A DNA stretch of 61,202 nt, filler included, from Dimorphilus gyrociliatus (lineage: Eukaryota > Animalia > Annelida), in the NCBI GenBank assembly GCA_904063045.1. It is 3 parts of 3 records of this genome, joined end to end, with 100 filler letters (N's around TTAATTAATTAA, not from the genome) between each part and the next. Parts side by side here need not be neighbours in the genome. Positions count along the whole stretch, not along the records: positions 36,829 to 61,202 come from CAJFCJ010000166.1; 2 more parts are not named here. One strand, 5' to 3'. Of this stretch, positions 8,080-61,202 are shown one piece after another; positions within the stretch are counted from its first letter, which is position 1; the number at the start of each line of letters is the position of its first letter. A model generated the notes under the pieces. That model was not told the DNA's origin. It was given only the letters and a program-made list of their open reading frames with translations, and searched no databases. Position numbers and translations under genes: made by a program.

Positions 8080-8649
8080 TTTAGATTGAGAGCTGTATGA
8101 TAGAAAATAAGAGAAAAAGTGGATTATATTATTGAATTAGATATTCAAATTTAATGAGTATGAACTAATCTCTAATTCAAATGTTGAACAGTTAACGATT
8201 GAATGTGACATTTCTTATTTAGGACTAAAGCTTTATTAGACTTTATTTAAATTATACATGCAATGCATTTTAAATAAAGTTAGCCTATAATATTACCATA
8301 GCAAAATGCATCTTTAATTCACCAATTGAACAAAATTTATCCTACCCTTTGTGAGTGATTATCACAAACTATTAATATAGACAATCGTTACTTTCTATTA
8401 ACATAAAATAATTTTATTGATTCTACCCTCTCTCTCTCTCTCTCTGCTTTGTGTCACGTGATCTATAGGTCAAAATTCATCTTACCAATCATATTTGATT
8501 ATGCAACACTATTTAATTTTGCTTTGTAAACATAGATATATATTTCTATAAATTCTAAATATCTATCTATAGTTAAATCTATATTCTGATTGATAATGAT
8601 AAAGATTGAGAAATGGTTAGGCAGAAGAAAACAGCAACTGATTTATACT

Positions 8650-36828: not shown

Positions 36829-37278
36829 TTTCAAGAATCAATGAAAAATGAATATAAGAAGTTTAAAGATCTAATTGAAAAAATGTATTTGGAAAATCTG
36901 GAACATTACCTTGTATTTGAAAATTATGCTAATAATCTTGTATTCTATGCAGACACTTTGATGAAAATGATATCAAAAGATGGATTTCAAAAATCTTTTT
37001 GGAAAAATCTGCCAGATTGGACAAGGATTTGTTGATGAAACAAAAGAGAGTTTGATGGATTTGTGTAAGATGTAAAAGTAATGATAAAAACAGGAAAAAG
37101 AACAAACCTAACCCTAGTCATCTAGAGAGAAATGGTGTAAGTGACATGGCTGCTATAATAGATATTGTACAAATGGTGAAAAATTAAAGAAATCACAATA
37201 ATGAAAAAGTTACAACTGATAGTATAATTAAAGAAATACAAGAAATAAGAAAGATACAAGTCATGCACAATTAAGGAA

Positions 37279-40200
37279 ATGAAAGGAAATAGGAAATATA
37301 CAAGTGACAAGGAAATAGAAAAATCATCAGTTGTTGAAAAAGATGAAAGTCATAAGAAATTGAAAGCAACATCTATAATAGAGACACATACAAGTGATAA
37401 TATTGTAAAAGAAACACTTGTAACAGAGAAGGATGCAAATTATAAGGAAATAGAAGAAACAACTATTCTACAGAAAAATTATGATACTAATATCAAAGAT
37501 AAAGGGATAGTCTGAAAGAACATCAACAAATTTTTAATGAATTGGAAAGAGAAAATGAACAAAGTATTCTAACAACAATTGATTCTCCAAGTGATAACAA
37601 GCCAGAACAAGTGAAAGATGATGAGTTTATTGCAGAAAAGAGAGACTCTGTTAGTATAACCAATGAAGAAAACAATCAACAAACCAAATCAACTGAATCT
37701 AGTATAGAAAGAAATAATGAACAAATAGTAAATACAGCTGAGGAAACCAAGAATAAAACAGCAACTGAAGAAAAGGATAAAAATGAGGAAGAAAGGTTTA
37801 CAGATCAAATCAGTGTTGAAAATGATCTTACTGAAATGATGGAAACAGCTACAAATGAAAATGATAACAAATTTTGTTCAAGAGACATTTCAAATGAGAC
37901 AATCATGGGTGCTTGTGATAAAGAATCTGTTGTTACAAAATTACATTTGTCAAAAAATTTTGAATTAGGATCACCATTAAAAACATCTTCACCAATAGAA
38001 ACTACTAACAATATCTCCATTGATTCTAGTGAACTGGATTTGTTTGATGAAAAAGCCTGGTTGGCATTGGAAGAGATGAGGTCTCAAGATCACTGCAAAG
38101 AAGCAAAAAAAATGGGTATAGATGGAGCCAATGCACTTGTTTTGAGTATGACAGATTGCATCAAAAAATATAAGGGATGGAAAATGATATTGAGGAACAA
38201 TTATAGAAAAGATAAAAAGCTGATTGATATTTATAGAGAATGGGAAAGAATTTCTTGTCAGACAAGGAGGCAAAAAACTTTTCAAAGTTATTGCCACCAA
38301 ATATACAAATGAAAACAGAATTTTTTATGATATCTGACAGTTCATTTAGAGATATTCAAGTCAAAACTATCTCAATATTAGCCTCCAAATATAAAATTGC
38401 TAAAAATGGAATATTAATCAACATTAGCCAATTAAACTATGAAGATATTTTACCCATTTTAATAAACTGGAATATTCAATGTCAATATATATTCATACAT
38501 ACAAATTTAAATTCTCCTAAAGAAACATATGGATTAGCAAAATTTCTAAAGAACAAGTATGGAACTTGCAAGAATGTGATCATAGCCATTCCATTTGGCA
38601 CAAAACTATTTTCTGCATACAAAGATATTCAAATGGCAACTAAGAACCAAGCCACTGTTCTTGATATGACTGATATGAGAAAATTGGGATTTACAGATAA
38701 TCCAACTGGAAATTCGAAATGTAAACACCTGACAAAGAAGGCACAAGAATTTTCAATTGATTTAGTAATGAAAACTTTGCAGAGAATTATCAAAGATCAG
38801 AAAGAGGAAACAATGGACATAGATACATCAACTAACAAGGTAATATTAATGTCTGGATTTAATTTCTATAAACAATTAAATACTCAATATGTTGTTAATT
38901 TGAGCAAATATCAGATTCCAAATGATGTCAATAGTTTTTTTAATCTTGGTTTAAAGTTTGTACATGAAAGTATAAAACCAGACAAATGGAAGCAATACAC
39001 ATTGTTCAATTTAGAGAGATTCTTTAAAAAGATATCAATCATTAAAAAACAAAATAAATCAACAAATCTGGAAAATCTTAGATGTATTAACTATCAATGG
39101 ATACCAAAAGAAGGATTTGAAAGAAATATAACATCTGTTGAAAAACTAGATGATACTGATGATGATGATGGTGGTGATGTGACAGTGATGAAATGTTACA
39201 ATTTTTCAAAGGATGCAGAAAGGCAATTCAAAGTAATATTTTTAAAGAGAATTCTAATCAAAAACTTGGAAAATTTGACAAAGATTTCTTTAAATCTCTG
39301 AGAAAGTTTTTATCCTTAGACATTGTGATTAAGCCAGCTGACAAGGATCTTGTGTTGTGATACAAAATACTGAAGATTATATCTACATGTGCAATCAATT
39401 ACTTTCTGATAATAAACAATATTGTAAACTATCAACAACTTCTAATATAAATATTTCTGGTAATAAATTTTTAGATAAGTCAATTTTCTATTATAAAGAC
39501 CTAATTAAAACATTTAAAGTTACCTTGGATGAAAAAGAATATAAACATTTGTTGGATTCTCTGTGTACAAAGAAGCATTCTTTTGAGAATAGAATATTTT
39601 ATGGCTTACCTAAAATACATAAGGAACCAGAACAATGGTTGGTTGATGGTAAAATTCCTAAAGGAAGCCTGTTGTTAGAATTTAAGGACAGAATCTTATG
39701 AAATATCAAGATATATCTCCCATCACCTCAAACCAATTAGTATGCTACATTCTTCATATATTGGTAATTCTAAACAACTGTTGATGAACTTAATAGAATA
39801 ACAATTCCAGATGATGCTCTTTTGGTGACTCTGGACATAAAAAGTATGTATACAAACATTGATACTTACACTGGATTGAAAGCTGTAAAATATTTTTTTG
39901 AAAAGTATTCCTACAAGCACAGACCTGATGATTTTCTTATTCAACTTCTCAAATTCAACTTGCATAAGAATCATTTTAAATTTTTAGATACAATATACTT
40001 ACAAAAGAGTGGTTGTGCTATGGGTCAAAGTTATGCTCCTGCTTATGCAAACTTATGGATGGCTTGGGTGGAAGAAGTCTACCTCTTCAACATTAGACCT
40101 AAACCTCTATTTTATAAAAGATATTTGGATGATATTTTCCTAATTTGGACAGGTAGCATTGATACATTTCATAGCTATCTTCAAAAAGTCAATAATATAT

Positions 40201-41511
40201 TAAAAATTTAAAGTTTGAGGAACAACTAGTTTTCAATCAATCAACTTTTTAGATTTAATTCTATTTAAAGGAACAAGATTTCTCTCAACAAATCAATTGG
40301 ATCATCTAACTTTCTTCAAAAATTGTGAAACATTTCATCAACTTCATAGAACTTCTTTTCATCCTAAACATATCTTTAAAGGACTTTTAAAATCTCAATT
40401 CAAAAGATTTCTTAATAACAGCTCCTCTCCATTTCTATTCTTTCAAACTTGTCAAACTGTGATGAAACCACTTTCCAGTCAAGGCTACAGTGCTAAAGAA
40501 ATAAGAAAAGCAATACAGTCTGAATTAAAGACCAAATGAAGAAAGAAAACTATGAAAGAGTGTTGGAAGAAAATAGAAAGACACAGTGGAATATTCCAAA
40601 GGAATTAAGAATATATTTTAACATAAGAAAAAAGATATTCTGCCCTCTAAACATGAATTTCATTTATAGGAAAAACTGTGTAGATTTAATTACAGATAAC
40701 TCAAAAGTATTTCTATTACAATGTAAAGAATGTGGACAAATGATGTACTTTTCTATACAGCAACATAAAAAAATCAGCATCTTACAAACACTTAAATACC
40801 TTCTATCAAGAAAATATTTGGAATTGAATAATATTGACCTAGTAGAAAACTATATCCAGCATCAACATTTTGCAGAAAATCAATTTAATATTTCCTTATG
40901 AACAATTGCAAAGAGATAAATCAACAATTGAAATGAACAGATATATTTATCTCTTGAATATGAAAAATGTCATGTATTATCCCTTTGGCTTAGCCAGATA
41001 TACCAGTTGTCCAGTATATTCAAAGCTACCATTAATTATGCCTTATAGAAATGATCATGGACCAGTGTTAAAAAAATTAACAAAAACCTATAAATTATTA
41101 AGTGATAAGAATTCCATATTTAAAAACATTCCTCTGATATTTGCTTTTACAAACAACATAAATAGTTATTTTCAATTAATTCATAAAAACATTTATTTTA
41201 AACAGGAACAAAATATGTCTACTTCCTTATTTCATAAAAGAAATACAACTAGTACAGATTCATCAGAAAAATGTCATTTTTCACTAAATAAAACAGGAAC
41301 ATCAACAATTAAACATTTTTATAAAAAGAAGAATGCAGAAGAAACATCTTCACTTAGTGCACCACCTCAACCAGGAAAAAAACCAAAGTTTGATACAATT
41401 ACAAGAAAATTCACTATGAAGAGGAAGATGGAGAAGGAAACAGACGAACATAAACCAGTAGTTGCAGAGAAGATGGTTAGAACTGGAAGAAGAATTAAGA
41501 AGAAACTTTAA
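37279..41511 (+). mobile_element. Penelope-like element polyprotein (frameshifted): acidic low-complexity region, SGNH-like module, RT, thumb, degenerate GIY-YIG-like region, basic tail
   Basis: IKPADK, FYGLPKIHK, LVTLDIKSMYTNI, G.AMGQSYAPAYANLWM, YKRYLDDIF and SFHPKHIFKGLLKSQFKRF are PLE RT/thumb motifs; pieces 37279-37515, 37542-38312, 38240-39301, 39357-39701, 39822-40211, 40297-40539, 40536-40901 and 40870-41511 are collinear. Confidence 0.88.
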
Positions 41512-41603
41512 ACTTTCAATATTTTTAATTAGTTGTTTTCCTTTGAATATTTGTTTGTTTGCTTCATAATAATTTGCTTTTCACTGCATATATCTGTACA
41601 ACA

Positions 41604-41606
<3 letters not shown>

Positions 41607-41648
<42 letters not shown>
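41607..41648. repeat. (TA)n microsatellite between the PLE polyprotein and the accessory ORF
   Basis: Read directly. Confidence 0.95.
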
Positions 41649-41650
<2 letters not shown>

Positions 41651-41754
41651 TATTCTATGTATTCTTAGATTTGTTCAGTTCATATCTATAATATTCTTTT
41701 TGTGTAGAATATACTAAATTTTACTAAATTATTTGTTTTTATAGATTTTCTATA

Positions 41755-42818
41755 ATGGCAAATAATACTCCACAAAATCAAATTGAAAGAATAGAAAATG
41801 ATGCAATTCTTATCAATCAAATAATTGATATTGAACATTTTTTACCACCATCTTTTCAACAATTTTTTAACTTTGGAACATTTTATAATCATCTTCAAAG
41901 ATTTAGAAGAGATGACAGAAATCATCCTCCAATTTTTGATGCAAGTAAATTTGAAAAAGATACTGTAGACAAACTGATGAAATTTAAACAATTTTGTGAT
42001 GAAAAAATGTGGCTTGTTGAACAACACCAAGTAAATAATATAAATAAACAACAACTTGGAGAAGTGATATTAAGATATTTGAATGGTACTGACCAGCTTG
42101 TAAGATTTAATAATACAATCAAAGTTAATAGAAGAAAACATTTCAATGTTGGTGAACTACTAGCATCTTTTGCAGATATTGGAGTGAATTTAACAGAAGG
42201 GGAAATGGAAAATCTTATGAAAATTCAACAACCAGCAGTGAAATTTACTACCAACTGTAATTTGCTTCTCTTAACAGTGCTAGTTTGAGTGATTTGGATT
42301 TGTTTCAAATAGAAGATGTTAAGAGGAATATCAATTTTCATGGAAATATTTTGATTGTAAATATTTGTGGATTAACATTTGAAAATTGCAAAGAAATCTT
42401 ATCAAAATGGAAGATAAAAACTAACATTGTAGCTCTACATATTCCTTTTGACACCATTAATGATATTGATGATAATTTTCCAGCTATTTATCAAAGTAAT
42501 GGAAATATTAAGGAATGTATGCTGTTTATATCATACAAAGTTCAGGATAATTTTAATAATCAACAATTTCTACCAGAAAGGTTAAAAAAAATGTTTACAA
42601 ATATTGTTTATATCAATGGCATTATAAGAGGAGATCCTTTTCATAGAAGACTCCAACAGGACAAGATATCTCCTTTAAGAAATATTGTTCAACATTTAAT
42701 TTTTAATGAGATATTAGTGAACACTAAAGATGTGATGGAACAACAACAAAGAAGAACTGGAAGAAGAAGATTAAACAGACAAGATATTCAGGCTATAGAG
42801 GAACAACACAATGAGTGA
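41755..42818 (+). CDS. PLE-associated accessory ORF (one frameshift at ~42285), paralogous to the PLE pre-RT module
   Basis: DEKMWL, GVNLTEGEMENLMK..P and ILIVNICGLTFENCKEILSKW align with DEKAWL, GKNFLSDKEAKNFSK..P and ILINISQLNYEDILPILINW; preceded by a T-rich tract ending TTTTATAG. Confidence 0.7.
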
Positions 42819-42884
42819 AATTAACAAACCTATCAAAACTAAATTTCAATCTCTGTATATTTTATATAAACACTTTGATATTTC

Positions 42885-43835
42885 TAACACAGTGTTAGGT
42901 TTTGGACTTAGAAAAATTTCGACTGAAAAAAGTTGATAAATTTTTCAAAAATATTCCAAGTCCAAATTGGAGGTGAAATCACCCCTTATCTTAGATTCAG
43001 TTATATTTCATGGTGCGGTAATGAATATGGCTCTGGACCGCCCCATGCAAATAGGATTGGCCATATATGTACAGAGGAAGGAACATAGAATTGAATCTAG
43101 GTCTTCTTCTGTTACATTTTATGAAAAGTGACTTACCTGATTATTATACCTGTGATTTTTGAAAGGTTACCCTCTAATTACTATAGAACGTAGGGTCGAG
43201 ATACTGGTGATAGAGTCTAAGGCTGCCAGTCAGCCATCCTCACCTACCACCGTTAACTTCAAAGCTCCATAGCTCAGCAACCGCTGGGGCCGATTTCGTT
43301 CAAATTTTGCACAGTTGCTCAGTTCAATTAGATCTAGCACTGTGTAAAATTTCATAACAATCGGAGCAAGTTGAAATTTCAACTTTCGTCAGTGGTCGAC
43401 TTGCTTTACTGACCACCAAATAGGTGATTTGTAGCAAAAAAAGTGTGGGATTGAACCAGTACCTATCCTAAGGTATAGTAAGCCTCTCAGAGATCAGTCT
43501 GGTGGCAAGCTAACCAGCCACTTTTCCCCTCTCACTTGATAAAGGAGGAATACCTCCGAAATATTGTGAGTTTTAATCTGGTGACATTGTTTTAGTTGCT
43601 AAATACAGGTTCTCTTCACCCTTGTGGAGAATTTGTAAGTGGTTTTGTTGGAGATACAGTTACAGCTTAGGCTGGGGAATTGCTACTCAAGATAGCAACT
43701 CCTCAATAGCTACACCAACCCTTAGCCAAAGCTTGGTTATAAGTGTGTGAGCACTTTTGGGATTACCAGTCTGTACTGATTGTGCTAATCCCTAACCCCA
43801 AGACCTAACCCTAACCTAACCCTAACCCTAATCCC
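42885..43835 (+). mobile_element. ~950-bp non-coding dispersed element with a hairpin end and a (TAACCC)n end
   Basis: Near-identical inverted copy at 54438-55410, partial copy at 59925-60070; palindrome CTAACAC-A-GTGTTAG at one end. Confidence 0.85.
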
Positions 43836-44316: not shown

Positions 44317-46852
44317 GGGTCAGGTCAGAACGCCCCACTCTCTTTAGAGAATTATAGAAAACAATGCTGAGAGAAAAATATTCTTAAATACCAGTTATTA
44401 TAAATATTTTTACCAGTTTTTTTTTATCAGTTTATTCTCAGAAATTGTGTTGCTTAAATATAATTCATCTTAGTATAATTAATTTTTTTGCTGTTAATGT
44501 CTCACTGAAAAAAGGAGGATGAATTTAAAAACTTGTTGGAAATGTATGAAGAAGTTTCATTGGACTCAAAAGAAGTTTAGATGCAAATTATGTAGGCACT
44601 TTTACCATGCTGAATGTTCAAATAGTCAGATTTTATTCTTTAATATTTCTTTTCTATTTAACCATTTCCTCAGATGCAGATTATTGTATAGACTGTTTTA
44701 ATATAAAAAACAAAAAGCTAATTGTTAAAATAAAAAAGCTGGAAAACAAAAAATCACCAACATGTTCAAAAGTATTTGGAAATGAAACTGTTAGTGAAAG
44801 TTCAAGTTCTGAACAGGTACAAAATATTTAACAAATATCTGTTAAAAAAACTATTTAATGTTTTACTATAGCTGAGGTTATCTTTTGACTTTGAATCTAA
44901 TTTCCCTGATGTTTCAAGTACTCCAGGGAATAATGGAATGGAGAGTTGTGATAAAGATATTGATATTGATAATGATGGAATTTCAAGAGAAGATCAACAT
45001 CAACCTGCTAAAATTGTTACAGAAAATAGTCCAGTTGTAAGAAGAATTGATATAAATAATGAATCTTCTTTTAATGATACAAGAGAGCTTTGTCTAAATG
45101 ATAATTTAAAACATGATTTTGAAATATTTAAGAATGGGAGCAGAAAAGGAAAAGATATTCTTCACAATAATTTTACTTATACTGTAAAAAGATCAACTAA
45201 AACAACCATTACCTGGAAATGTAGTCAAAGAACTAAAAAATCACCATGTCTTGCATCTGTAATTCAAAAAGATTTAAAGTTCATTTTGAAAAATTCTAAT
45301 CACATTCACAAAAGAGAGAAAAATGATATGAGAAAAATTATTGAAGCAAGGTTAAATTTAAAGGAAGCTGCAATTATTGATAAAGACAAATCTGGTAAAA
45401 GAATTGCAGAAGATATCAGCCTGAAGTTCAGAAAGGATATTTCTCATATTCCAAGCATTGATGTCATGAAAAGATCTGCTAATAGATACAGAGAAGGTGC
45501 CAGACCAAAGCACCCAGAAAACATTATGTTTGAATTAAATTTAAATGAAATTCCAGATAATTTTTTCTTAAAAGATATAAAAGGGAAGAAAAGCTGAAAC
45601 ATGATGTTTGCAACTGACCATCAAATTAAATTATTGAAACATTGTAAGATATGGTTTATTGATGCCACATTTAAAATTGTGAGAAAACCTTTTTACCAAT
45701 TGTTTACAATTCATGGATTTATAAGAAAAGAAGGTGAATATAAACAAGTTCCTTTAATGTTTGTCCTCATGACAGGAAAGAAGAAGAAACATTATTCATT
45801 GATATTTGAGGTTGGCTTTCTAAAGTAAATATTTGAGTAAAAATTCTAAAGATATATTTTTCTTTACAAGGAGTTAAAAATCTTAATAGATGGAAAAAGC
45901 CCAAAAAAGTTTGTTCTTGATTTTGAAAAAGCTCTTTGGATATCTTTAAAAAATGCTTTTGTTGATTCTGATCTACAAGGATGTGCTTTTCATTTTAAAC
46001 AAGCAATTCTTAAAAACATACAGGTAAATTAAAGTAATTATAACAATTCTGTTACAGATTTAATTTGTGAAATTAAGAAATTAACAAATACAAATTTTCT
46101 TTTTAGAAATTAGGATACATCAAGGACTATAAAATGAAAGGTTATAAAGGAAATGTGTTAAGAAAACTAATGTGTCTAGCATACTTACCAGCATCATTCA
46201 TCAAACAAAAGTTTTATCAAATTAAAGAGGAACTTTTGGAACTGAATTTATATGCTGATCTTCTTGAGTATATGGAATCTACTTATAATGAAAGCAATAT
46301 TTGGAAACCAGAAAATTGGTCAGTTTATAAATTAATAGTTCGTACAAATAATCATGTAGAGTCTTGGCACACAAGAATCAATCAAAATTTGAAAAGCAAT
46401 GAAAACTTTTATACTCTTATCACTGAACTTCATAGAGAAAGCAGCCTTATTGAAGTTTATGAGGATATGTTGGTGGAAAATAAAATGAGACAGAATCAGA
46501 AGAATAAATATAAAGATTTGCAGGATATTATCTTTGAGTTGTGGAAGAAGTTTGAAGAAAGAGAATTAAGTTTAGATAATCTCTTAAAGGGTTTAATTGA
46601 CTTGAACATTGCTTGAAAAATTATTTCTTTTTTTGTGATCACTTATTATATTTGTTTAAGCTTTTGTACTTTAAGACAAAAAATACATTATGCATATATA
46701 TTTTTATATTCAATTGACTTTTTTTAATTTAATAAGTACAGCATTAAAAAATATTATGTTCTTCAAAAATCAGTGGGGCGTTCTGACTCATGAGTGGGGT
46801 GCTCGAAATCAAGAATGGGGCATTCTGACCCAAAATTGGGGTGTTCTGACCC
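44317..46852 (+). mobile_element. Mutator-like (MULE) DNA transposon; intron-containing transposase 44519-46616 with PHD-like finger, FLYWCH and DDE core; premature stop at 45595-45597
   Basis: C..C...C..C..FYH..C; TWKCSQR...C...H.H; WFIDATFK, VLDFEKA, GCAFHF, RTNNHVESWH; GT-AG introns; inverted ends GTCAGAACGCCCCACT (~44324) and AGTGGGGCGTTCTGAC (46772), repeated to 46852; no TSD found. Confidence 0.85.
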
Positions 46853-47759
46853 TAAGCTGGCTGCTTTTGCCAATAATTTGGGGTCTCTGTTGAAGCATCT
46901 TTTAATATCACCTAGTTCTTTTGGACTCATTAGACTGCTTAGTTTCCAAATTGGATACAGTGGCAACAGGCTTTCTTTGGTTAAGTTTCAAGGTGATTTC
47001 TGCATTCCTAGCAGCTTCATATAGTTGTGCTAGTGAATGCAATCTAGGGTGCAGGGTATTTACCAAATGTAAAATATCTGCTTGTAATCCTTTCTGTATA
47101 ATTTCCATTAATTTTAGTTCCTTCAAGGTACTTTCAAAAGCTGGGTTTAATGGTCTGGGAGGAGAGAGATTTTTGATTAGTTGTTTAGCTCAATTGACAA
47201 ACTGTACTATACTTTCTCCATTCATTTGCTTGAGGTTATTTAATCTTTCCTGATATTCTCTGGGATCAGGGTCAAACTCATTATGAAGAGCTTCCCAAAT
47301 TCTTCCAATAGTAGGATTTCCATCCAGAGCCAATACCAAATCTCTTGCAGGTCCAGTTAAATAGTCCATAAGATTTGCTTTAATTATGTCTGGTTCTATC
47401 CATCCATATGCTTGACATGCTTGATTAAATTCTTCTTTAAATTTAGAGCATTCCCTTGATCCATCATAAGCCCTGAGTATGGTCTGTTGAGGATGATCCC
47501 AAGCTGCTCGAAGTGTTTGAATAAGGGTCTTGATGTCTGGATTTGGATTATTCCTAGGAGGATCTTGTCCAGTATCATAAGCCATGGGCAAGGTAATATT
47601 GTTTCTCTTCATATCCTCTACCAATAAATGGTAATCATTGAGTAATTTCTGTTGATAGTCAGTGGCTCTTCCTTCCTGGATTGTGATTCTTGGAGTTTGT
47701 GGGCTGTTTGTACTCTCTGAACTAACATCATCTCTATCACCATTTCCTCCAGTTGCCAT
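46853..47759 (-). pseudogene. Second gag copy (family 2) with in-frame TGA at 47190-47192
   Basis: Clearly similar to the 16857-17735 protein; FVN*AK versus FVNRAK. Confidence 0.85.
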
Positions 47760-47817
47760 ATCTTTAGTTTAGTAGAATAATTGAATTGAAATTGCATCCT
47801 GTTGACTGCGCCAAGTT

Positions 47818-48322
47818 TGTACTACTTTTGCTTGGTTGATACATAAACAAGGGAATTAAGCAATACTGGTTCTAGTCGAACCTTTAAACAACAATGTTTA
47901 AATTTTAACAATTTATTCAAACTAAAATACTTAAGCAGCTAGCAGAATGAAGTTAAGATAATACAGGAGGGTCTCAAGAGCACCTTAGGCCAATTTGCAG
48001 AACCAATGTTGATCCAGAGGGGTACTGGTCCTGAGAAGGGTTGTCTTGTCCCAAGAAGGTTGTAGGTAGAGTTGAAATGGAGGGGAAGTCAGGTGGTTGG
48101 TTCCTCTCTGAGACTGAGGATCTAGCTGTTTATATCTGTTTTCATGAGTTGGAAGTGGCCAATCATTGGTTTGCAACGGGTGGGGCAAATACCATTTATA
48201 TCATTGGTAATTGCATTAAGTTGCTTGCTAATTGCATTAAGTCAATTGTTCGTCTTCTAGAGCAATAGACTTAACAATATTAAGGTGTGGTTCTCTATTG
48301 TCTTTCATAACAGGATGTTACA
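47818..48322 (-). mobile_element. 5' LTR (family 2) with PBS at 47796-47813; far boundary tentative
   Basis: Same PBS and 4-nt spacer as element 1; shares CAATACTGGTTCTA.TCGAACCTTTAAACA with LTR family 1; TGTAACA at 48322 as candidate start. Confidence 0.65.
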
Positions 48323-48528
48323 AGGGTCAGTCTTTCTCAGGTACTCTTTCTATGGCCTTCCATAGAATTACTCATGGTTAATAACCTTATAAAATTTAGC
48401 GATTACTGAAAAAATATAAATTACAGAGATAAATGAATTAATTGAGTATCTGCAAATATATTATCTAGTTTGTAATTGTTTGTAATTAATGCACTTTTTC
48501 AATGGTTAATAAATAAATTATAATGTTG

Positions 48529-48683: not shown

Positions 48684-50228
48684 ATGAAAATTTGTTGTAC
48701 CTTCTACTTTGTAATAATTTCGATTATTCATGTAAATATATAAATATAATATACATAGTTAAATATAAATTCATGTTGATCAGCAATGGAGAGTTGATGG
48801 TGAAATTGTAGGTGATTTTTATGTAAATCTATTGAAATGGAGAGGAAATGGAAGAGATTATAGTGGAGGTATTTGCGATACTGGACCATTTCTTCCTGAT
48901 AGTAAGAAAATATGCGATCCTATCTTTTATGTTTGCTTCTCCAAACTATATGAAAAGTAAGTAAAAAACATAGAATAAAGGTTCTAACCCTAACCCTAAC
49001 CCTAACAGCAAAACATGCTCTCTTGGTCGCATGGTTACATTTGAAAAAAATAATTATTATACAATTACACACTTTCCTGGTCTTCAACCTTATCATATAG
49101 AGATTGACAGGGAATATCAGGCTTGTTTACCAGTTTTCATTTAATTATTCCTCTCTTCTATCATCCTATTAACAATTTCAGGGTGGATTAATTGTTGATA
49201 TAGACGTTCGCGATCACGATATCTACAGCCAACCTGATTTCATTGATACTTTCCAATTTCATTTACGAACTAGGCCAAATGGGGAAAGGAAAAAATCTTG
49301 GCTAAGGGGAAAATATTTTCACAATTCAAGAAGTGTCTTTAATTTAGAATTTTGGGCAAAATGCCGAACAAATTATTATGGCGAAGATTGCTCTCTTTCA
49401 AATATTTCAGCATCGACTAAGGCAAAGTCAACTAGGCCTATCCCTATTCATAAAATAACTTCAACTAGGCTTAAACCTATCTTTAACATAGCTTCAACTA
49501 GGCCTAAACCTATCAGTAAATTAGCTTCAACCATGCCAAACACTATCTTTAACCTAGCTTCAACTAGGCCTATCCATAACATAGCTTCAACTAGGCCTAA
49601 CCCTATCCATAAAATAGCTTCAACTAGGCCTAAACCTATCAGTAAATTAGCTTCAACTAGGCCTAACCCTATCCATAAAATAGCTTCAACTAGGCCTAAA
49701 CCTATCAGTAAATTAGCTTCAACCATGCCAAACGCTGTCTTTAACCTAGCTTCAACTAGGCCAAACCCTAATCAAAATTCAACAACATTAACTAAGCTAA
49801 ATCCAAAAAGTAACCTACCTAACCCTAACCCTAACCCCAACCATAACCATATCCCTGGGTATATTCCACTGTTGGCTTCTATATTGGTTCTAGCTTTTCT
49901 GTCCTTTGCTATGAGCCTCATTATTTATCTTTATCGAGAACGAAAAAAGTCAAGAGGAGGAGAACAAATACAAAATCAAATGTATTTCAATCAACAATGC
50001 CTCAATACCAATTCGGATAAATTTTGTAATGTAGATGGAGCCAGTAGTAAAATTTTTGATTTAAATTCATCTAAACATTCAGAAAATGTTGTGTTTAATA
50101 ATCTCTACACAGATTTGGAAATTGAAGATCCAAACGTCTATGAAGTTTTACCAACCTATACCAATATGGAATTTGAAATGAATAGAAATCCTCCAAACTC
50201 TAAACATTATCAAATACCTAAACTTTAA
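48684..50228 (+). CDS. Type I membrane protein with Notch-ligand N-terminal C2/MNNL-like domain, S/T/P-rich repeat stalk, TM and cytoplasmic tail (459 aa); exons 48684-48731, 48784-48956, 49009-49120, 49182-50228
   Basis: Spliced frame is open; G.D..G..CD...CD..F.VC, LIVDIDVRDHD and C..NYYG.DC motifs; 33-bp/11-aa repeats ASTRP(K/N)PI; TM ILVLAFLSFAMSLIIYLY. Confidence 0.8.
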
Positions 50229-50726: not shown

Positions 50727-51059
50727 TTAAGAAAGAAAGAGAGGGAGAGAGAGAGAGAGAGAGGGAGAAAGAGAGGAAACTGTATATGTAAATTTTCTTC
50801 TTACCTACCAGTTTATACTTAAACTTATACCATGTACTACATAGTTTTCTCCAAACACTTACAGAATTTTCAATAATATTTACAAATATTTTTTCAACAG
50901 GAAATAATTAATTATATCTTTTTAATTGTACTTAACCTGATATTATTATGCCAATCATAAATTTTTTTTACAGAAATCAATTATCTTTCACAGTTATTGT
51001 GATAGACTTTATTACATTTTCTTTATACAATTCATTACCAATAATATTATTTTTTCAGT

Positions 51060-51480
51060 TGGAAATATGTTTTTGATATAACGAATGTATTGCCAACAGC
51101 CAATAACTTTTTCTGACAATGATTTTGGTTCAAATTTGATCAAAATCGGCCCAGTAGTTGCTGAGATCTAGTTTTTTCTATGAACGCTATATATAAACAC
51201 TGTATAACCTTATATATAACAAAAATATTCGTCAGAAAAAAACTTTTTTTCTTAATATTCAAGTTAGAGCTTTGAAATTCAGTATAGATAGTAATTTGGG
51301 TATGCCGATTCCAAATCCGTTTACAGAAATCAATTATCTCTCACCATTTCCGAGCGACAGTGATTCAAAGTTTAGTATGAACCCTTTTTTTTTAAAAACA
51401 AAAATTTTTTTTTTCAAGTTTAGCAATATATTAAAAAAAAATGTACCACAGAGGTGTCTGTTAAGTAGTTTAAATCTTAC
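51060..51480. repeat. ~360-bp repeat unit; further copies at ~53470-54110 (two in tandem) and partial at ~51715-51870
   Basis: TTCTGACAAT..TTT...TTCAAATTTGAT.AAAAT.GG.C.AGTAGTTGCT.AGAT at ~51112, ~53473 and ~53837. Confidence 0.75.
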
Positions 51481-53469
51481 GAACTCAATGTTATTTGGTC
51501 ACTCTGTCTGCTATAGAACACAACAAAATGTAAGTAAATTTGTTAATTTACCCCATTTAATTTCATTGTTTGTAATTAATTTTTGTAAGTTTGTATCTAT
51601 AAAAATATATAGATTATTGTCTATTGCTTTTTAATAATTCTTAACAATTATTTCCCTTTCAATTATTGATAATTTCTATCAAGAGTGATAAGTTACTTTT
51701 GGACAGTATATCAAATATCAGCCTATATTTTATTTTCGTCACAAAAATTTTAATTCCGTTAATAATTAAGATAGAGATTTGAAATTTGGTATATACACTA
51801 ATATTATGACACCGATTTTAAATCTTTTTACAGATTTCAATTATCTGCTATGGTTCCAAAGTTATGGCAACGTAAAATTTTTTGCCAATCTACTCAACAT
51901 AGGTGGTATATAATAACATTCGTCAGATAAAAAACTAATTTATTTAGAAAGTTTGTACATAGATTAATTTCCATACGCCAAAAACAAATCTATTTACAAA
52001 ATTTCATTATATATTTATTGTTTAAAAATGCTTATTTTTTGTTGCTTTTTGTTCAATATGTTGAGAGTGTTTTTTCCTTTTCTCAGCTACTGAATATGAC
52101 TTTTCAAAGATATCCCCATCCAGAAAAAATTAACCCAACATTTACAAGTTTTACTTATAATAGTCTCTTGATACAAATCAAGCATATTCTATTAATTGTT
52201 TTTAATTCAATGAACAATAATTTTGGAAAATCTTTTGAGACTCTTTTCAATAGTCATATTTTGAGTTATCCATTACTTGGAAATTTAAAAATTTATGAAC
52301 ACAAAAAGCTATATAACAGAATCAAACTTCACTTTGAGGAATTTCAAGAGAATGTCAATACTGAGATCAAGAATTATTACAAAGAACAAATTGACTTAAA
52401 TCAATTTTTTTATTTAAAACCTCTTCTTAAAACTCCTGCAAGTTGTTGACAAGTGGAGAATTCCTTACCATATGTCATTTATCAAGTACTAAAGAGTAAA
52501 CCCAATTGTATGGAGGGTGCTGAAATATTTAATGATGTAATTGCTGAAATCAAAGAAATGTATTTTGATCAACTTGTTGAACCAGAAGTAAATGAACAAC
52601 TCAATTCAACATTGATAATTGATAATCAAAACCAGAATGAAACAAGCCATTTTGCACCCACATCAACTTCATCACCAATACCAATATCAAATTGAAATGA
52701 AAATGATAATGAAAATTGTAAAAAAATTAAAGATGCTAATGAAAGGTATTTTAATTTGGAAAACAACAATCATTTAGCAATTAGGTCCAAAAAGGAAACA
52801 AAGAAAAATTTTAAAAACATTTTGCCCCACAATGGATTTTTGTACAGAAACTGTAATTATATCAGACTATTTTACTGACATTAAAGTTCCAGATTTTAAA
52901 AAATTTTTCAAAAAATAATATTAAAAATGTTCAATTATTATTATTCAAAAAGTTATCATTCAATACTTTTCCACATTTGCTGGTTGAGTGGCCTTTAAAG
53001 GATAAAAAAATTATTGTGATTTTGAAAGAATATCCAAAGAAACTCAAATTTGAAATTGTTGACTTTTTAAAGTGAAAACCTAATATGCCAAAGGATATCT
53101 ACTTTTTAAAAAAATATTTTCCAAGTAGGATAGAAAATAATTTGGGTTGGAGTGGCTTTCATTTAATTGATTTTGACCCAAACAAATATAAAAAAGAGCA
53201 GACAATGTTTCTTAAATTTATAAAATATGTTTTTTTGGAAAAGAAATTGGTTTAGAAACAATATTTTCTATTTCATTTTTATTTGTATATATGTTTTTAA
53301 CTTTTATATTCAGTTTTCTCTTTTTCTTGTACTTTTTTTCTATATATATATATCTTTGTGTATTTCAACTTTTGTAGTTTTTTCTACCTTTTTCTAATAA
53401 ATTTTAGTTTTCAATTTTAAACAACCGTCTTACATATTTTCTTATTTATTCTTTTATAAAGTTTATAAA

Positions 53470-54110
53470 CATCTTCTGACAATAATTTTGCTTCAAATTT
53501 GATCAAAATCGGCCTAGTAGTTGCTGAGATATGGATTCTTTTGAATGTTGTACTGTAACACTATTACAGGCTAATATAAAGAAGAAAATATTCGTCACAA
53601 AAAACCTAAATTTATTATTAATAATCACAGAGCTTTCAAATTTTGTACATAGACTAATATCGATATGCTAATTTCAAATCTCTTTACAGAATTCAACTAT
53701 CTCTCATAATTTTTGAGTTGTGGTGCGTTAAAGTTTAATGCATTTTCCATATATAATTTATAGTATATAATATTATTTTTTAAATAGGATATATTGAATT
53801 AATAGAACGAATATATTTCTAATTGGTAATATTTTATTCTGACAATAATTTACTTCAAATTTGATTAAAATTGGTCCAGTAGTTGCTAAGATATGCATTC
53901 CTATGAATGTTATATATAAACTCTGTTTTTAACATTGAAATATTCATCATCAAAAACTAAACTTCTTACTAATAATCACAGAGTATTCAAATTTTGTACA
54001 TAGACTAATATTGATATGCCAATTTCAAATCTTTTTACAGATTTTAATTATCTCTTATAGTTTTTGAGTTATGGTGCGTTAAAAAATAATACATTTTCTT
54101 ATATAATTCA
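53470..54110. repeat. Two tandem copies of the ~360-bp repeat
   Basis: Periodicity read directly. Confidence 0.75.
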
Positions 54111-54437
54111 TTATAATAATTAATATTTTTTAAATGACATATACTTAATTAATGTATGAAATTGTTTTAAACTTTGATTTTGGTGTGTTTTTTCTTTGAC
54201 TGCTAACTTTCTACTACCTAGAGTTGAAAGTACATTTAGGATTGCAAAATTCCAATTCATAGACTTCATATTCAAAGAATATAAAAAAGAACAAACTTGT
54301 CTCTTGAAACTTCTGAAGCAGTTTTTGAAACAATTATATAGACTTTATCATTATTTTTCATTTCATATGTTTTTAATTCTAGATTATAGAGATTTATTTG
54401 TTTTTTCATTTTTATATACCTTTTTCTTTTTAAATAA

Positions 54438-55410
54438 AAGGGTTAGGTTAGGGTTAGGTCTTGGGGTTAGGTTAGGGTTTAGGGTTAGGTCTTGGGGTTA
54501 GGGATTAGCACAATCAGTACAGACTGGTAATCCCAAAAGTGCACACACACTTATAACCAAGCTTTGGCTAAGGGTTGGTGTAGCTATTGAGGAGTTGCTA
54601 TCTTGAGTAGCAATTCCCCAGCCTAAGCTGTAACTGTATCTCCAACAAAACCACTTACAAATTCTCCACAAGGGTGAAGAGAACCTGTATTTAGCAACTA
54701 AAACAATGTCACCAGATTAAAACTCACAATATTTCGGAGGTATTCCTCCTTTATCAAGTGAGAGGGGAAAAGTGGCTGGTTAGATTGCCACCAGACTGAT
54801 CTCTGAGAGGCTTACTATACCTTAGGGTAGGTACTGGTTCAATCCCACACTTTTTTCACTACAAATCACCTACTTGGTGGTCAGAAAAGCAAGTCGACCA
54901 CTGACGAAAGTTGAAATTTCAACTTGCTCCGATTGTTATGAAATTTTACACAGTGCTAGATCTAATTGAACTGAGCAACTGTGCAAAATTGAAAGAAATC
55001 GGCCCAGCTGTTGCGGAGCTATGGAGCTTTGAAGTTAACGGTGGTAGGTGAGGATGGCTGACTGGCAGCCTTAGACTCTATTACCAGTATCTCGACCCTA
55101 CGTTCTATAGTAATTAGAGGGTAACCTTTCAAAATCGCAGGTATAACAATCAGGTAAGTCACTTTTCATAAAATGTAACAGAAGAAGACCTAGATTCAAT
55201 TCTATGTTCCTTCCTCTCTGTACATATATGGCCAATCCTATTTGCATGGGGCAGTCCAGAGCCCTATTCATTACCTCACCATGAAATATAACTGAATCTA
55301 AGATAAGGGGTGATTTCACCTCCAGTTTGGACTTAGAATATTTTTGAAAAATTTATCGACTTTTTTCAGTCGAAATTTTTCTAAGTCCAAAACCTAACAC
55401 TGTGTTAGGC
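54438..55410 (-). mobile_element. Inverted copy of the ~950-bp telomere-motif element
   Basis: Reverse complement of 42885-43835 with few substitutions. Confidence 0.88.
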
Positions 55411-56888: not shown

Positions 56889-57519
56889 TGTACAACTTTG
56901 GTTATATTTTACATGCTTGAACTCTATTATTTTATGCAACATATACATGTACATCTTAAAACCTACGCAAGAAAATGCTATAACATTGGCCAAACATAAG
57001 TCTGATTAGTCAGCTTGAAGGCTCATCTTTAATTACCAATAAAGGTTTGGCCAAGTTATAATTTAATTAACTGCCTAGGGTGTGGCCAAGTTATAATTCA
57101 ATTAACCTTCCTAAATGTTGAACCTTGTAACATCCTGTTACTAAAGATAAATATGAACTACACATTTTGGCAACTGTAAAGTGATGATTGGATGTCAGAG
57201 ACAAACCTCAAAGTATATAAATCCTCATTATTCTCATTTGGCATGCAGCTTCCATCTGGACCCAAGGACCTGGGAAAATCATCTGGAAACAACCTCCACT
57301 GGAACCATCCATCTACTCCTCAACATTGGAAGACAGTTTGGTAATTTGGCAACCTGCTTTTACAACTATCTACTCTGCTATCGAACTCTCATATTGTTCT
57401 TGCTTAAGTATTATTTTGCGAATAAACTGTTTTAATTTAAACATTTGTTTAAAGGTTCGAGTAGAACCAGTATTGTTATAACTTGCAAACGCATAGATTT
57501 TGCCAGCAAGAGCAGTACA
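56889..57519 (+). mobile_element. Solo LTR (family 1), 631 bp, 4-bp TSD CTGC
   Basis: TGTACA...GTACA; CTGC at 56885-56888 and 57520-57523; reverse complement of 17796-18430. Confidence 0.93.
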
Positions 57520-59925: not shown

Positions 59926-60070
59926 TTAGGGTTAGGCCACTCACACACTCAGGGTTAGGTCTTGGGGTTAGGGATTAGCACAATCAGTACAGCCTGGTAA
60001 TCCCAAAAGTGCACACACACTTATAACCAAGCTTTGGCTAAGGGTTGGTGTAGCTATTGAGGAGTTGCTA
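59925..60070 (-). mobile_element. Partial copy of the ~950-bp element (telomeric end)
   Basis: Near-identical to ~54480-54600. Confidence 0.85.
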
Positions 60071-60772
60071 GAGTAAGAACTTATTGCACAATATGAATCA
60101 AGTAGTCTTCACATCTCAAGTTGATTGATGATTTAATGTCTTAATGTAGTATATATCTAGTATTAAGTGAAATGGAACCAAGTATGGTTGACCTACATGG
60201 TTTCGTCTTCCCCTTTAGCAAAGACTCATCAGGGTCATTTCAGAGGATAGCTTAACCTAAATACTATCATGAAGGGGAGGATAGGACCAATTCTATAATT
60301 GTATCCTTCCTTGCATGAATTTTTGCTGTAATTCTTTTTGTTTTAAATGTTTGGTTATGTATAATGTGTGAGAGTAGAATATAAAATCCAAATTGTCTGA
60401 TAGATCTTATAGTGTTAATTAAAGAATTGTTCAAGTATATCAATTAGAAATATTTAATTCAGAATATTATAGATAAAGAAAAATGATTCTTAAATGAAAA
60501 CACTGGAGCTTCCCTCACTTTCATATGGACTGATATTTCAATATCTAGGTTGTGAATATGACAAGCATGTTGCACAATAATATATTTAACTTTTAAGTGA
60601 CATAATTAAATTGCTGCTTTGTTATTTTTTTGTTTGTAAAATTTGTATCCTGCACTAAGATGAATACATAGTTATTATATGAATGTTTTTTTCAATGAAA
60701 TATAAAATAATATGTTTGCATAAAAAAGACATGGAAAGCAATAATATATAATATGAATGATTTGTGCAATTC

Positions 60773-61202
60773 TCACTGATATCTTTGTCTATTTAATCTC
60801 CTTCTTCCAGTCCTTCTTTGTTGCTGAACCATCATTTCTTTTGTGTTCACTAAAATTTCATTAAAAATCAGTTTGTTGACAACATTTCTTAATGAAGAGA
60901 TCTTTCCCTGCTGCATTCGTCTATGAAAAGGATCTCCTCTTATAATGCTATTGATATAAAAACTTTGTGAACATTTTTCGTAAATTTTCTGGTGGTGGTA
61001 ATTGATTATTTTATGATTTCGAACATTGTATTTTATAAATAGGAGACATTCTTTAAAGTTTCCATTGTTTTTGTAAATATCTGGAAAATTCCATCAACAT
61101 CATTAATGATATCAAAAAGAATATGAAGGGCTACAACTGTAGCTTTTTATTCCATTTTGATAAAATTTCTTTGCAATTTTTAAATGATAGACCAGAAATG
61201 TT
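60773..61202 (-). pseudogene. Degenerate second copy of the PLE accessory ORF (homolog of 42285-42818), cut by window end
   Basis: NISGLSFKNCKEILSKW, IIRGDPFHRRMQQGKIS.LRN and LIFNEILVNTKEMM.QQQRRTGRRRLNRQ, with frameshifts. Confidence 0.85.

What the first reader, a model, noticed from the sequence alone, without database searches (positions are those of the whole stretch)
37279..42818. Penelope-like element with an RT-fused SGNH-like module and a free-standing paralog of that module as a second ORF
Seen: joined across a frameshift (~38240), the pre-RT region reads DEKAWL...YREMGKNFLSDKEAKNFSKLLPP...FMISDSS...ILINISQLNYEDILPILINW...IFIHTNLN. The co-oriented ORF at 41755-42818 reads DEKMWL...FADIGVNLTEGEMENLMKIQQP...LSDLD...ILIVNICGLTFENCKEILSKW...VALHIPFD. 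Both proteins carry RTGRR near their C-termini. Established: canonical endonuclease-bearing PLEs (Penelope/Poseidon, Neptune) have one RT+GIY-YIG ORF; extra co-oriented ORFs including GDSL/SGNH esterases are known from bdelloid Athena/Terminon elements, and SGNH domains occur in ORF1 of some LINEs. Inference: this is a multi-ORF PLE lineage whose SGNH-like (possibly structural or lipid-binding) module exists both fused to RT and alone. The SGNH call rests on block spacing only, and the catalytic residues look degenerate.
Basis: partly seen in the sequence, partly recalled or inferred. Interest (0 to 1): 0.85.

Follow-up and report, generated by a model that had tools for sequence, protein, structure and literature searches.

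The report
Nuclease-dead Penelope retroelement with duplicated esterase
This is a broken copy of a Penelope-type jumping gene, probably from a tiny marine worm, from a small lineage that keeps a disabled DNA-cutting domain and carries its esterase-like packaging domain both fused to the copying enzyme and as extra separate genes, which is a new arrangement of known parts.

Summary
The pre-RT module (38040-38800) and the downstream ORF (41755-42818, itself split by a frameshift near 42277) are true paralogs. A profile built without window sequences finds both (E 1e-43 and 1e-16). The module is probably SGNH-fold; the evidence is converging but not decisive. Two intact relatives (58% RT identity; one from the annelid Dimorphilus gyrociliatus, the likely host) encode helical domain-SGNH-RT-GIY-YIG in one ORF. 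One of them also carries two free module paralogs, divergently upstream. Other copies in the host hold RT and ORF2, one contig links them in order, and two ORF2 copies show dN/dS 0.23. The RTs nest among Neptune-like elements, where an SGNH domain (free ORF1 or RT-fused) is common and already published. New are the extra paralogs in varying positions and the retained dead nuclease, a Terminon-like trend in an endonuclease-bearing clade. Priming mode and function of the paralogs are inferred, not shown.

The parts
36829..37035 (+). N-terminal helical region of the RT polyprotein, cut by the piece edge; the true start probably lies about 75 codons upstream, outside the available sequence
   Evidence: profile of relatives' N-termini matches weakly, E 0.03 among 6035 ORF pieces
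37249..38039 (+). acidic low-complexity linker (pI 4.4, 24% D+E over 37503-38039), broken by a frameshift near 37510
   Evidence: similar linker in P0001 and P0002
38040..38800 (+). module A: SGNH-like domain with its upstream extension, RT-fused, frameshift at about 38238; block-I Ser equivalent 38339, strand-3 His 38498, block-V His 38726
   Evidence: continuous with RT in P0001 and P0002
38880..40539 (+). Penelope-type reverse transcriptase: N-terminal GLKF motif, IKPADK motif, core with YLDD at 40122-40133, thumb; broken by several frameshifts
   Evidence: Pfam RVT_1 E 3.4e-6; 58% identity to P0001 and P0002; trees
40650..41010 (+). degenerate GIY-YIG endonuclease: CxxC kept, catalytic positions lost; frameshift near 40886
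   Evidence: hhalign probability 89.6, E 1.9e-6 to 52 PLE endonucleases; alignment
41011..41511 (+). thumb-linker motif (PLIMPY...FAFTNN) lying after the nuclease, then a basic tail (pI 10.2) with RTGRR at 41479-41493 and the stop
41604..41653 (.). (TA)n microsatellite in the 243-bp gap between the two ORFs; no hammerhead found there
41755..42818 (+). ORF2, about 354 aa: free-standing paralog of the module, block-I Ser lost, frameshift near 42277, RTGRR at 42753-42767
42884..43831 (+). young 950-bp repeat with a CCCTAA-like 3' tail, 65 bp after ORF2; probably a separate element
   Evidence: 97% identical inverted copy at 54461-55408; depth about 16-20 copies
60773..61202 (-). second copy of ORF2 (3' part, cut by the piece edge), 80% nucleotide identity, several single-base indels
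   Evidence: dN/dS 0.23, p 7e-8
60189..60237 (-). type I hammerhead ribozyme about 540 nt downstream of the second ORF2 copy, same strand
   Evidence: 1.5% of shuffles give any such hit; a similar motif lies downstream of RT in L001 at 8246-8301
59951..60070 (-). 120-bp 3' fragment of the 950-bp repeat with a telomere-like tail, 120 nt past the hammerhead
   Evidence: 98-99% identical

Best explanation
This is a decayed copy of a low-copy (about 5-10 per genome) Penelope-like retroelement, probably in the annelid Dimorphilus gyrociliatus. It descends from Neptune-like elements that had a free ORF1 ending in an SGNH domain followed by an RT-endonuclease ORF. Shown: in this lineage ORF1 is fused to RT; one or two further ORF1-like copies sit beside it as separate genes under purifying selection; the GIY-YIG domain is kept in frame without its catalytic residues; a hammerhead lies 3' of the coding region. 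Inferred: the RNA is bound by the RT polyprotein and packaged with the free paralogs, which act as non-enzymatic ORF1p-like scaffold or membrane-tethering proteins and restore the separate structural protein that fusion removed. The dead nuclease serves as a nucleic-acid-binding or structural zinc module. cDNA synthesis is primed at existing 3'-OH ends (breaks, chromosome ends, or nicks made by another element) rather than at a self-made nick. Confidence is about 0.9 for the anatomy and about 0.5 for the mechanism.
For: Intact one-ORF relatives P0001 and P0002. Free paralogs of 472 and 225 aa in L001/L004; the 472-aa one is a copy of the whole N-terminal third, and is seen in three runs. One contig of run X1 (depth 688) has pieces in thumb, nuclease, C-terminal linker and ORF2 in order, and summed depth over RT and ORF2 is about 5-10 times single copy. 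dN/dS 0.23. The endonuclease is homologous, but the Tyr, Tyr, Gly, Thr, Arg, His, Glu and Asn positions that are 96-100% conserved in 52 relatives are replaced in the three members. The RT clade has support 100 and lies inside a group (support 91) holding all SGNH-bearing elements in that tree. SGNH: ESM features 0.91-0.92, 22 of 30 hits in SGNH/GDSL clusters; top VIA-align rows are PAF-AH, Z about 8 over 135-144 residues. Liposome binding by a retrotransposon esterase does not need the active site (PMC3905857).
Against: No RNA data and no intact copy from this family in the host were seen. Linkage of RT to ORF2 rests on the window plus one contig whose spacer is unknown. The position and strand of the free paralogs differ between species. 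No element ends, target duplication or hammerhead were found for this copy. The SGNH call has no significant HMM hit, the model is low confidence (pLDDT 48), enolase-like folds score as high in the wide search, module B gave no SGNH match, and the profile match to relatives' SGNH is weak (probability 10%). Nothing tested the priming route.
Confidence: 0.55

Rival explanations
1. ORF2 is not part of the RT unit. It is a separate non-autonomous unit, or the ORF1 of a neighbouring two-ORF element in a tandem array, which sits next to RT because such elements cluster or share (TA)n targets.
For: A (TA)n tract lies between the ORFs. In tandem arrays of two-ORF relatives a free SGNH ORF1 follows the RT ORF (L022, L087). 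The second ORF2 copy is followed by its own hammerhead. Order and strand differ in L001.
Against: The gap is only 243 bp and has no hammerhead. A second, diverged copy links the RT C-terminus to ORF2. RT and ORF2 have similar copy depth. No RT follows either ORF2 copy. ORF2 is only 21% identical to the fused module, so it is not a tandem repeat of the same unit.
Confidence: 0.2
2. The point of the duplication is enzymatic. Each element keeps one active esterase (the fused copy in the window and P0002, the free 472-aa copy in L001) plus inactive partners that regulate it or pair with it.
For: In the window and in L001, the less degenerate copy has the block-I Ser and block-V His (SDSS...KHLT, GDSS...KHLT) while the other copies have lost them; P0002 has GNSS...KHLT. 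The strand-3 His typical of transposon esterases is present in 5 of 6 modules.
Against: The triad Asp is absent in all. The block-II Gly and block-III Asn are inconsistent. Only two elements show the one-active, one-dead pattern.
Confidence: 0.15
3. The module is not SGNH but some other alpha/beta domain, and the motif matches are coincidental.
For: No Pfam, NCBIfam or PDB sequence hit. Foldseek E above 0.001. The atlas structure search gave no SGNH row. The model of module B matched none.
Against: Five-strand order with the block-I and block-V motifs in the right places. Same position before RT as SGNH-like domains of sister elements, one of which hits Lipase_GDSL_2 at E 0.01. ESM features and VIA-align agree.
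Confidence: 0.1

Closest known systems
Neptune-clade PLEs with esterase (Neptune1_Ren, BRIDGE1_FR; PMC3905857, PMC5408684)
   Same: Neptune-like RT with GxKF and DKG motifs, SGNH-type domain ahead of RT, C-terminal GIY-YIG, hammerhead 3' of the ORF.
   Different: Nuclease dead but retained, linker zinc finger lost, SGNH very divergent, extra free paralogs in addition to the fused copy, long RT branch.
Terminons / Athena of bdelloid rotifers (PMC6431247, PMC5408684)
   Same: Multi-ORF PLE without a working fused nuclease, GDSL/SGNH accessory ORFs (some lacking catalytic residues), hammerheads.
   Different: RT nests among endonuclease-bearing Neptune-like elements (no Athena reference was in the tree). 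The GIY-YIG remnant is fused. No telomeric repeat directly after the hammerhead. Known size is 6-8 kb, not up to 40 kb.
MjPLE01 and PLE-X families, endonuclease loss inside EN+ clades (cited in PMC8557442)
   Same: Secondary loss of nuclease function in an EN+ lineage.
   Different: Here the domain is kept in frame across three lineages at about 55% RT identity, and accessory ORFs are present. MjPLE01 itself was not compared.
Esterase ORF1p of CR1/L2/RTEX LINEs (ZfL2-1; PMC3905857)
   Same: SGNH domain after a helical region and poorly conserved linker, strand-3 His, arginine-rich peptide, likely RNP and membrane role.
   Different: Different RT class. LINE esterases keep the full triad; these lack the Asp and most copies lack more.

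Membership tests
Penelope-like elements (order) | PLE-type RT with N-terminal GxKF/Y and DKG motifs | tested here: met
   GLKF and DKG in P0001 and P0002; GLKF and IKPADK in the window; intact GIY-YIG PLEs are the next nearest RT hits
Penelope-like elements (order) | hammerhead ribozyme near the 3' end or pLTR | tested here: met
   window 60189-60237 and L001 8246-8301; none found for the main copy, whose 3' end runs into a repeat
Penelope-like elements (order) | pLTR, tandem or inverted terminal structure | tested here: inconclusive
   5' end lies beyond the piece edge; no flanking repeat in L001 or L002
Neptune clade | RT phylogeny within Neptune | tested here: inconclusive
   nests among elements with Neptune hallmarks (50 of 69 endonuclease-bearing hits have the linker finger), but no named Repbase references were available and the branch is long
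Neptune clade | CX2-5CxxC finger in the RT-EN linker | tested here: not met
   absent in all three members
Neptune clade | catalytically intact C-terminal GIY-YIG with R, H, E, N residues | tested here: not met
   homologous domain present, catalytic positions replaced in all three
Hydra clade | short (<3 kb) single ORF, DKT and RWK motifs, no GxKF | tested here: not met
   GLKF and DKG present, ORF above 3.6 kb
Naiad/Chlamys | N-terminal GIY-YIG, CxC motif, DKA | tested here: not met
   the nuclease remnant is C-terminal
Terminon/Athena | Athena-clade RT without fused endonuclease | tested here: not met
   fused GIY-YIG remnant present; nearest RTs are EN+ elements
Terminon/Athena | reverse-complement telomeric repeats immediately after the 3' hammerhead | tested here: not met
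   none in the 25 nt available in L001; in the window they come about 215 nt later and belong to a separately mobile repeat
Terminon/Athena | several accessory ORFs including GDSL/SGNH | tested here: met
   one extra paralog in the window, two in L001
SGNH hydrolase superfamily | five-stranded parallel sheet with SGNH topology | tested here: inconclusive
   element order fits; PAF-AH Z about 8; ESM 0.92; but pLDDT 48, no HMM hit, enolase-like rows tie
SGNH hydrolase superfamily | catalytic S, G, N, D-x-x-H | tested here: not met
   module A and P0002 keep the S, N and H equivalents but no Asp; ORF2 lacks the Ser, and its DPFH does not align to block V
SGNH hydrolase superfamily | ester hydrolysis or lipid binding | not testable with these tools
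   needs purified protein

The most novel reading that the evidence does not exclude
An endonuclease-bearing Neptune-type lineage in small annelids has independently become a Terminon-like multi-gene retroelement. It has a conserved dead GIY-YIG repurposed for nucleic-acid binding, nuclease-free priming, and a set of SGNH-fold paralogs (plus other divergently transcribed ORFs) that build a dedicated membrane-associated particle.
Probability: 0.25. Interest if true: 0.8.

Novelty: new variant of a known kind. Interest (0 to 1): 0.55.

Why it matters
It gives a traceable intermediate between ordinary nuclease-bearing PLEs and multi-ORF nuclease-free ones. The steps can be read from relatives: free SGNH ORF1, fusion to RT, re-duplication as free genes, and inactivation without loss of the nuclease. 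Intact natural members (P0001, P0164, P0002) allow direct tests of two open questions: what retroelement esterase domains do once catalysis decays, and how PLEs prime reverse transcription without their own nick. It also suggests that the 'single ORF' description of EN+ PLEs undercounts a common two-ORF Neptune-like group.

Tried and rejected
Word-index homolog searches with module B and module A pieces found nothing (length limits apply), and the family profile found only P0164. Pfam, NCBIfam and PDB sequence searches gave no SGNH hit. The fold of the ORF2 C-terminal piece gave no clear match; it lacks strand 1 because of the frameshift. The atlas structure search was uninformative. Rfam missed the hammerheads; a custom scan found them. 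No RNA run holds the region, so expression is untested. Window proteins are not on record, so the 5' flank could not be fetched. The Terminon paper was not held. The careful tree did not finish; both trees are quick trees. Rejected: Hydra or Naiad membership; Terminon membership; RTGRR as a family hallmark; the 950-bp repeat as the element's own pLTR (no hammerhead, 97-99% identical copies against 80% for ORF2).
Full report
Observation. The piece 36829-61202 is a transposon-dense, AT-rich animal region. On the + strand a long coding region runs from the piece edge to a stop at 41511 in many frameshifted pieces, followed 243 bp later by a second coding region 41755-42818 in two pieces. Read with X at the breaks, the pre-RT module and the second ORF align over 154 residues at 21% identity with score 108; shuffles average 44 and never exceed 83. 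An HMM built only from relatives finds them at E 1e-43 and 1e-16. The paralogy is real. A second copy of ORF2 lies at 60773-61202 on the minus strand, 80% identical. Between the two copies dN/dS is 0.23 over 134 codons (p 7e-8), so the free gene was under purifying selection.

Host and state of the copy. The closest named RT is DgyrCDS14925 of the annelid Dimorphilus gyrociliatus, and its contig shares a 635-bp segment at 98% identity with window 56889-57519. The window is therefore probably D. gyrociliatus (inference). In the one run that holds the region, summed contig depth is about 5-10 times single copy over both RT and ORF2, with other copies about 15% diverged. One contig (depth 688) has pieces in the thumb, nuclease, C-terminal linker and ORF2 in the same order, which links the two ORFs in a second copy; the spacer is unknown. 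Other copies differ by indels at several of the window's frameshift sites, and some contigs covering those RT sites do not show the difference, so this copy looks truly decayed. Over 37100-38709, however, a contig matches with no substitutions and 10 gaps, so some upstream breaks may be errors of the long-read assembly.

Intact relatives. P0001 (1327 aa, run ERR14224706, organism not known to me) and P0002 (1212 aa as annotated; the genomic frame runs on into an assembly gap) are 58% identical to the RT core, well above the next hits. Both are single ORFs: helical N-terminus, acidic linker, module, RT, thumb, nuclease remnant. So the fusion is genuine and not an artefact of joining frames. L001 also carries, head to head and upstream, a 472-aa free copy of the whole N-terminal third and a 225-aa more degenerate paralog. 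L002 has two short tandem paralogous ORFs of another kind in that position. Free paralogs are thus a lineage trait, but their position and strand vary.

The module. The single-sequence model of module A has the five-strand order expected of SGNH proteins, at pLDDT 48. PAF-AH and other SGNH hydrolases lead the second-look structural alignment (Z about 8, 135-144 residues) and give most of the longest alignments in the wide search, where enolase-like folds tie on Z. ESM features place 22 of 30 hits in SGNH/GDSL clusters (0.91-0.92). No HMM library confirms it, and the profile match to sister elements' SGNH domains is collinear but weak. I rate the fold at about 0.85-0.9. Against the ZfL2-1 esterase residues (PMC3905857), module A and P0002 keep equivalents of the Ser, strand-3 His, block-III Asn and block-V His, but no triad Asp. 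P0164 keeps GDS and the His. ORF2, the P0001 fused copy and the 225-aa copy have lost the Ser.

The segment 40650-41010 is homologous to PLE GIY-YIG endonucleases (probability 89.6, E 1.9e-6). The Tyr, Tyr, Gly, Thr, Arg, His, Glu and Asn positions that are 96-100% conserved in 52 relatives are replaced in the three family members, and the linker zinc finger is gone, while CxxC and the PxGL turn persist. A dead domain kept in frame across RTs only about 55% identical suggests a retained non-catalytic role (inference). The nuclease also lies before the thumb-linker motif, an order shared with a subgroup of intact relatives. Type I hammerheads lie 540 nt after the second ORF2 copy and about 930 nt after RT in L001; 1.5% of shuffles give any hit. 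The main copy's 3' end runs into a 950-bp repeat and has none.

Ancestry. The three RTs form a clade (support 100) on a long branch. It lies inside a group (support 91) that holds all SGNH-bearing elements in that tree, most with the early nuclease position (quick trees, no named references). In 23 of 80 metagenomic loci, almost all with an intact RT-EN ORF, a separate upstream ORF1 ends in an SGNH-like domain; P0057, P0068 and P0088 have it fused. The nearest RT neighbour P0008 is a two-ORF element in a tandem array. The simplest history is a free ORF1, then fusion to RT, then re-duplication of ORF1 as separate genes, with loss of nuclease activity.

Mechanism. Shown: anatomy, paralogy, selection, loss of catalytic residues, hammerheads. 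Inferred: the free paralogs are ORF1p-like scaffolds. The LINE esterase binds liposomes even with its active site mutated, and arginine-rich peptides are proposed RNA binders (PMC3905857), which fits the basic RTGRR tails. Inferred: without its own nick the RT uses existing 3'-OH ends or nicks made in trans, as proposed for other EN-less PLEs (PMC8557442). Telomere targeting is not shown: CCCTAA-like tails near both ORF2 copies belong to a younger repeat. The main rival is that ORF2 is an independent unit next to RT; the (TA)n spacer and tandem arrays in relatives keep this at about 0.2.

Comparison and verdict. Esterases in Neptune-like PLEs are published (Neptune1_Ren, BRIDGE1_FR; PMC3905857 supplement, PMC5408684). 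So are multi-ORF Terminons with inactive GDSL ORFs (PMC6431247, PMC5408684) and endonuclease loss within EN+ clades (PMC8557442). I found no report of the combination: fused plus free paralogs with a retained dead GIY-YIG in a Neptune-derived lineage (the library lacks many papers and Repbase). It fails the membership tests for canonical Neptune and for Terminons, but works like a small Terminon built from Neptune parts. Verdict: new variant of a known kind, interest 0.55.

Noticed in passing
loci L006-L031, L055, L087 (e.g. L020 4994-9285; L087 4208-8289): A widespread marine Neptune-like group has two overlapping ORFs (ORF1 of about 500-900 aa ending in a degenerate SGNH domain, ORF2 with intact RT and GIY-YIG), often with hammerheads, and with the nuclease placed before the thumb-linker motif. 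It departs from the single-ORF description and may deserve its own study.
   Followed up: partly
window 42884-43831 (+), 54461-55408 (-), 59951-60070 (-): Young 950-bp repeat of about 16-20 copies with a palindromic 5' region, 5'-truncated copies and variable CCCTAA-like 3' tails. Two of three copies lie just downstream of ORF2 copies in the same orientation. It may be a non-autonomous retro- or Helentron-type element.
   Followed up: partly
L002 8150-8632 and 9023-9502 (-): Two tandem paralogous ORFs of about 130-150 aa, about 80% identical, head to head with the RT ORF in D. gyrociliatus; no Pfam match and no similarity to the window.
   Followed up: partly
window about 44330-46870 (+): Mutator-like DNA transposon: FLYWCH finger (E 1e-7) and transposase pieces apparently split by introns, with inverted-repeat-like ends; a 68% identical relative lies in L002.
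   Followed up: no
window 47190-48330 (-) and 56889-57519: LTR retrotransposon remnants: gag-like ORF, tRNA primer-site-like sequence near 47800, and LTR-like segments, one 98% identical to L002.
   Followed up: no
window 49395-50228 (+): ORF with about ten 33-bp tandem repeats (Ser/Thr/Pro-rich 11-mers) followed by a transmembrane-like stretch; mucin-like membrane protein piece of unknown origin.
   Followed up: no
window 52018-52695 (+): Two adjacent ORF pieces (143 and 80 aa) inside a family of diverged repeats at 50900-54150; no family match.
   Followed up: no
protein P0150: A PLE RT-GIY-YIG protein with an N-terminal Ulp1/C48 protease domain (E 5e-10); may be a gene-model chimera or another accessory fusion.
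   Followed up: no
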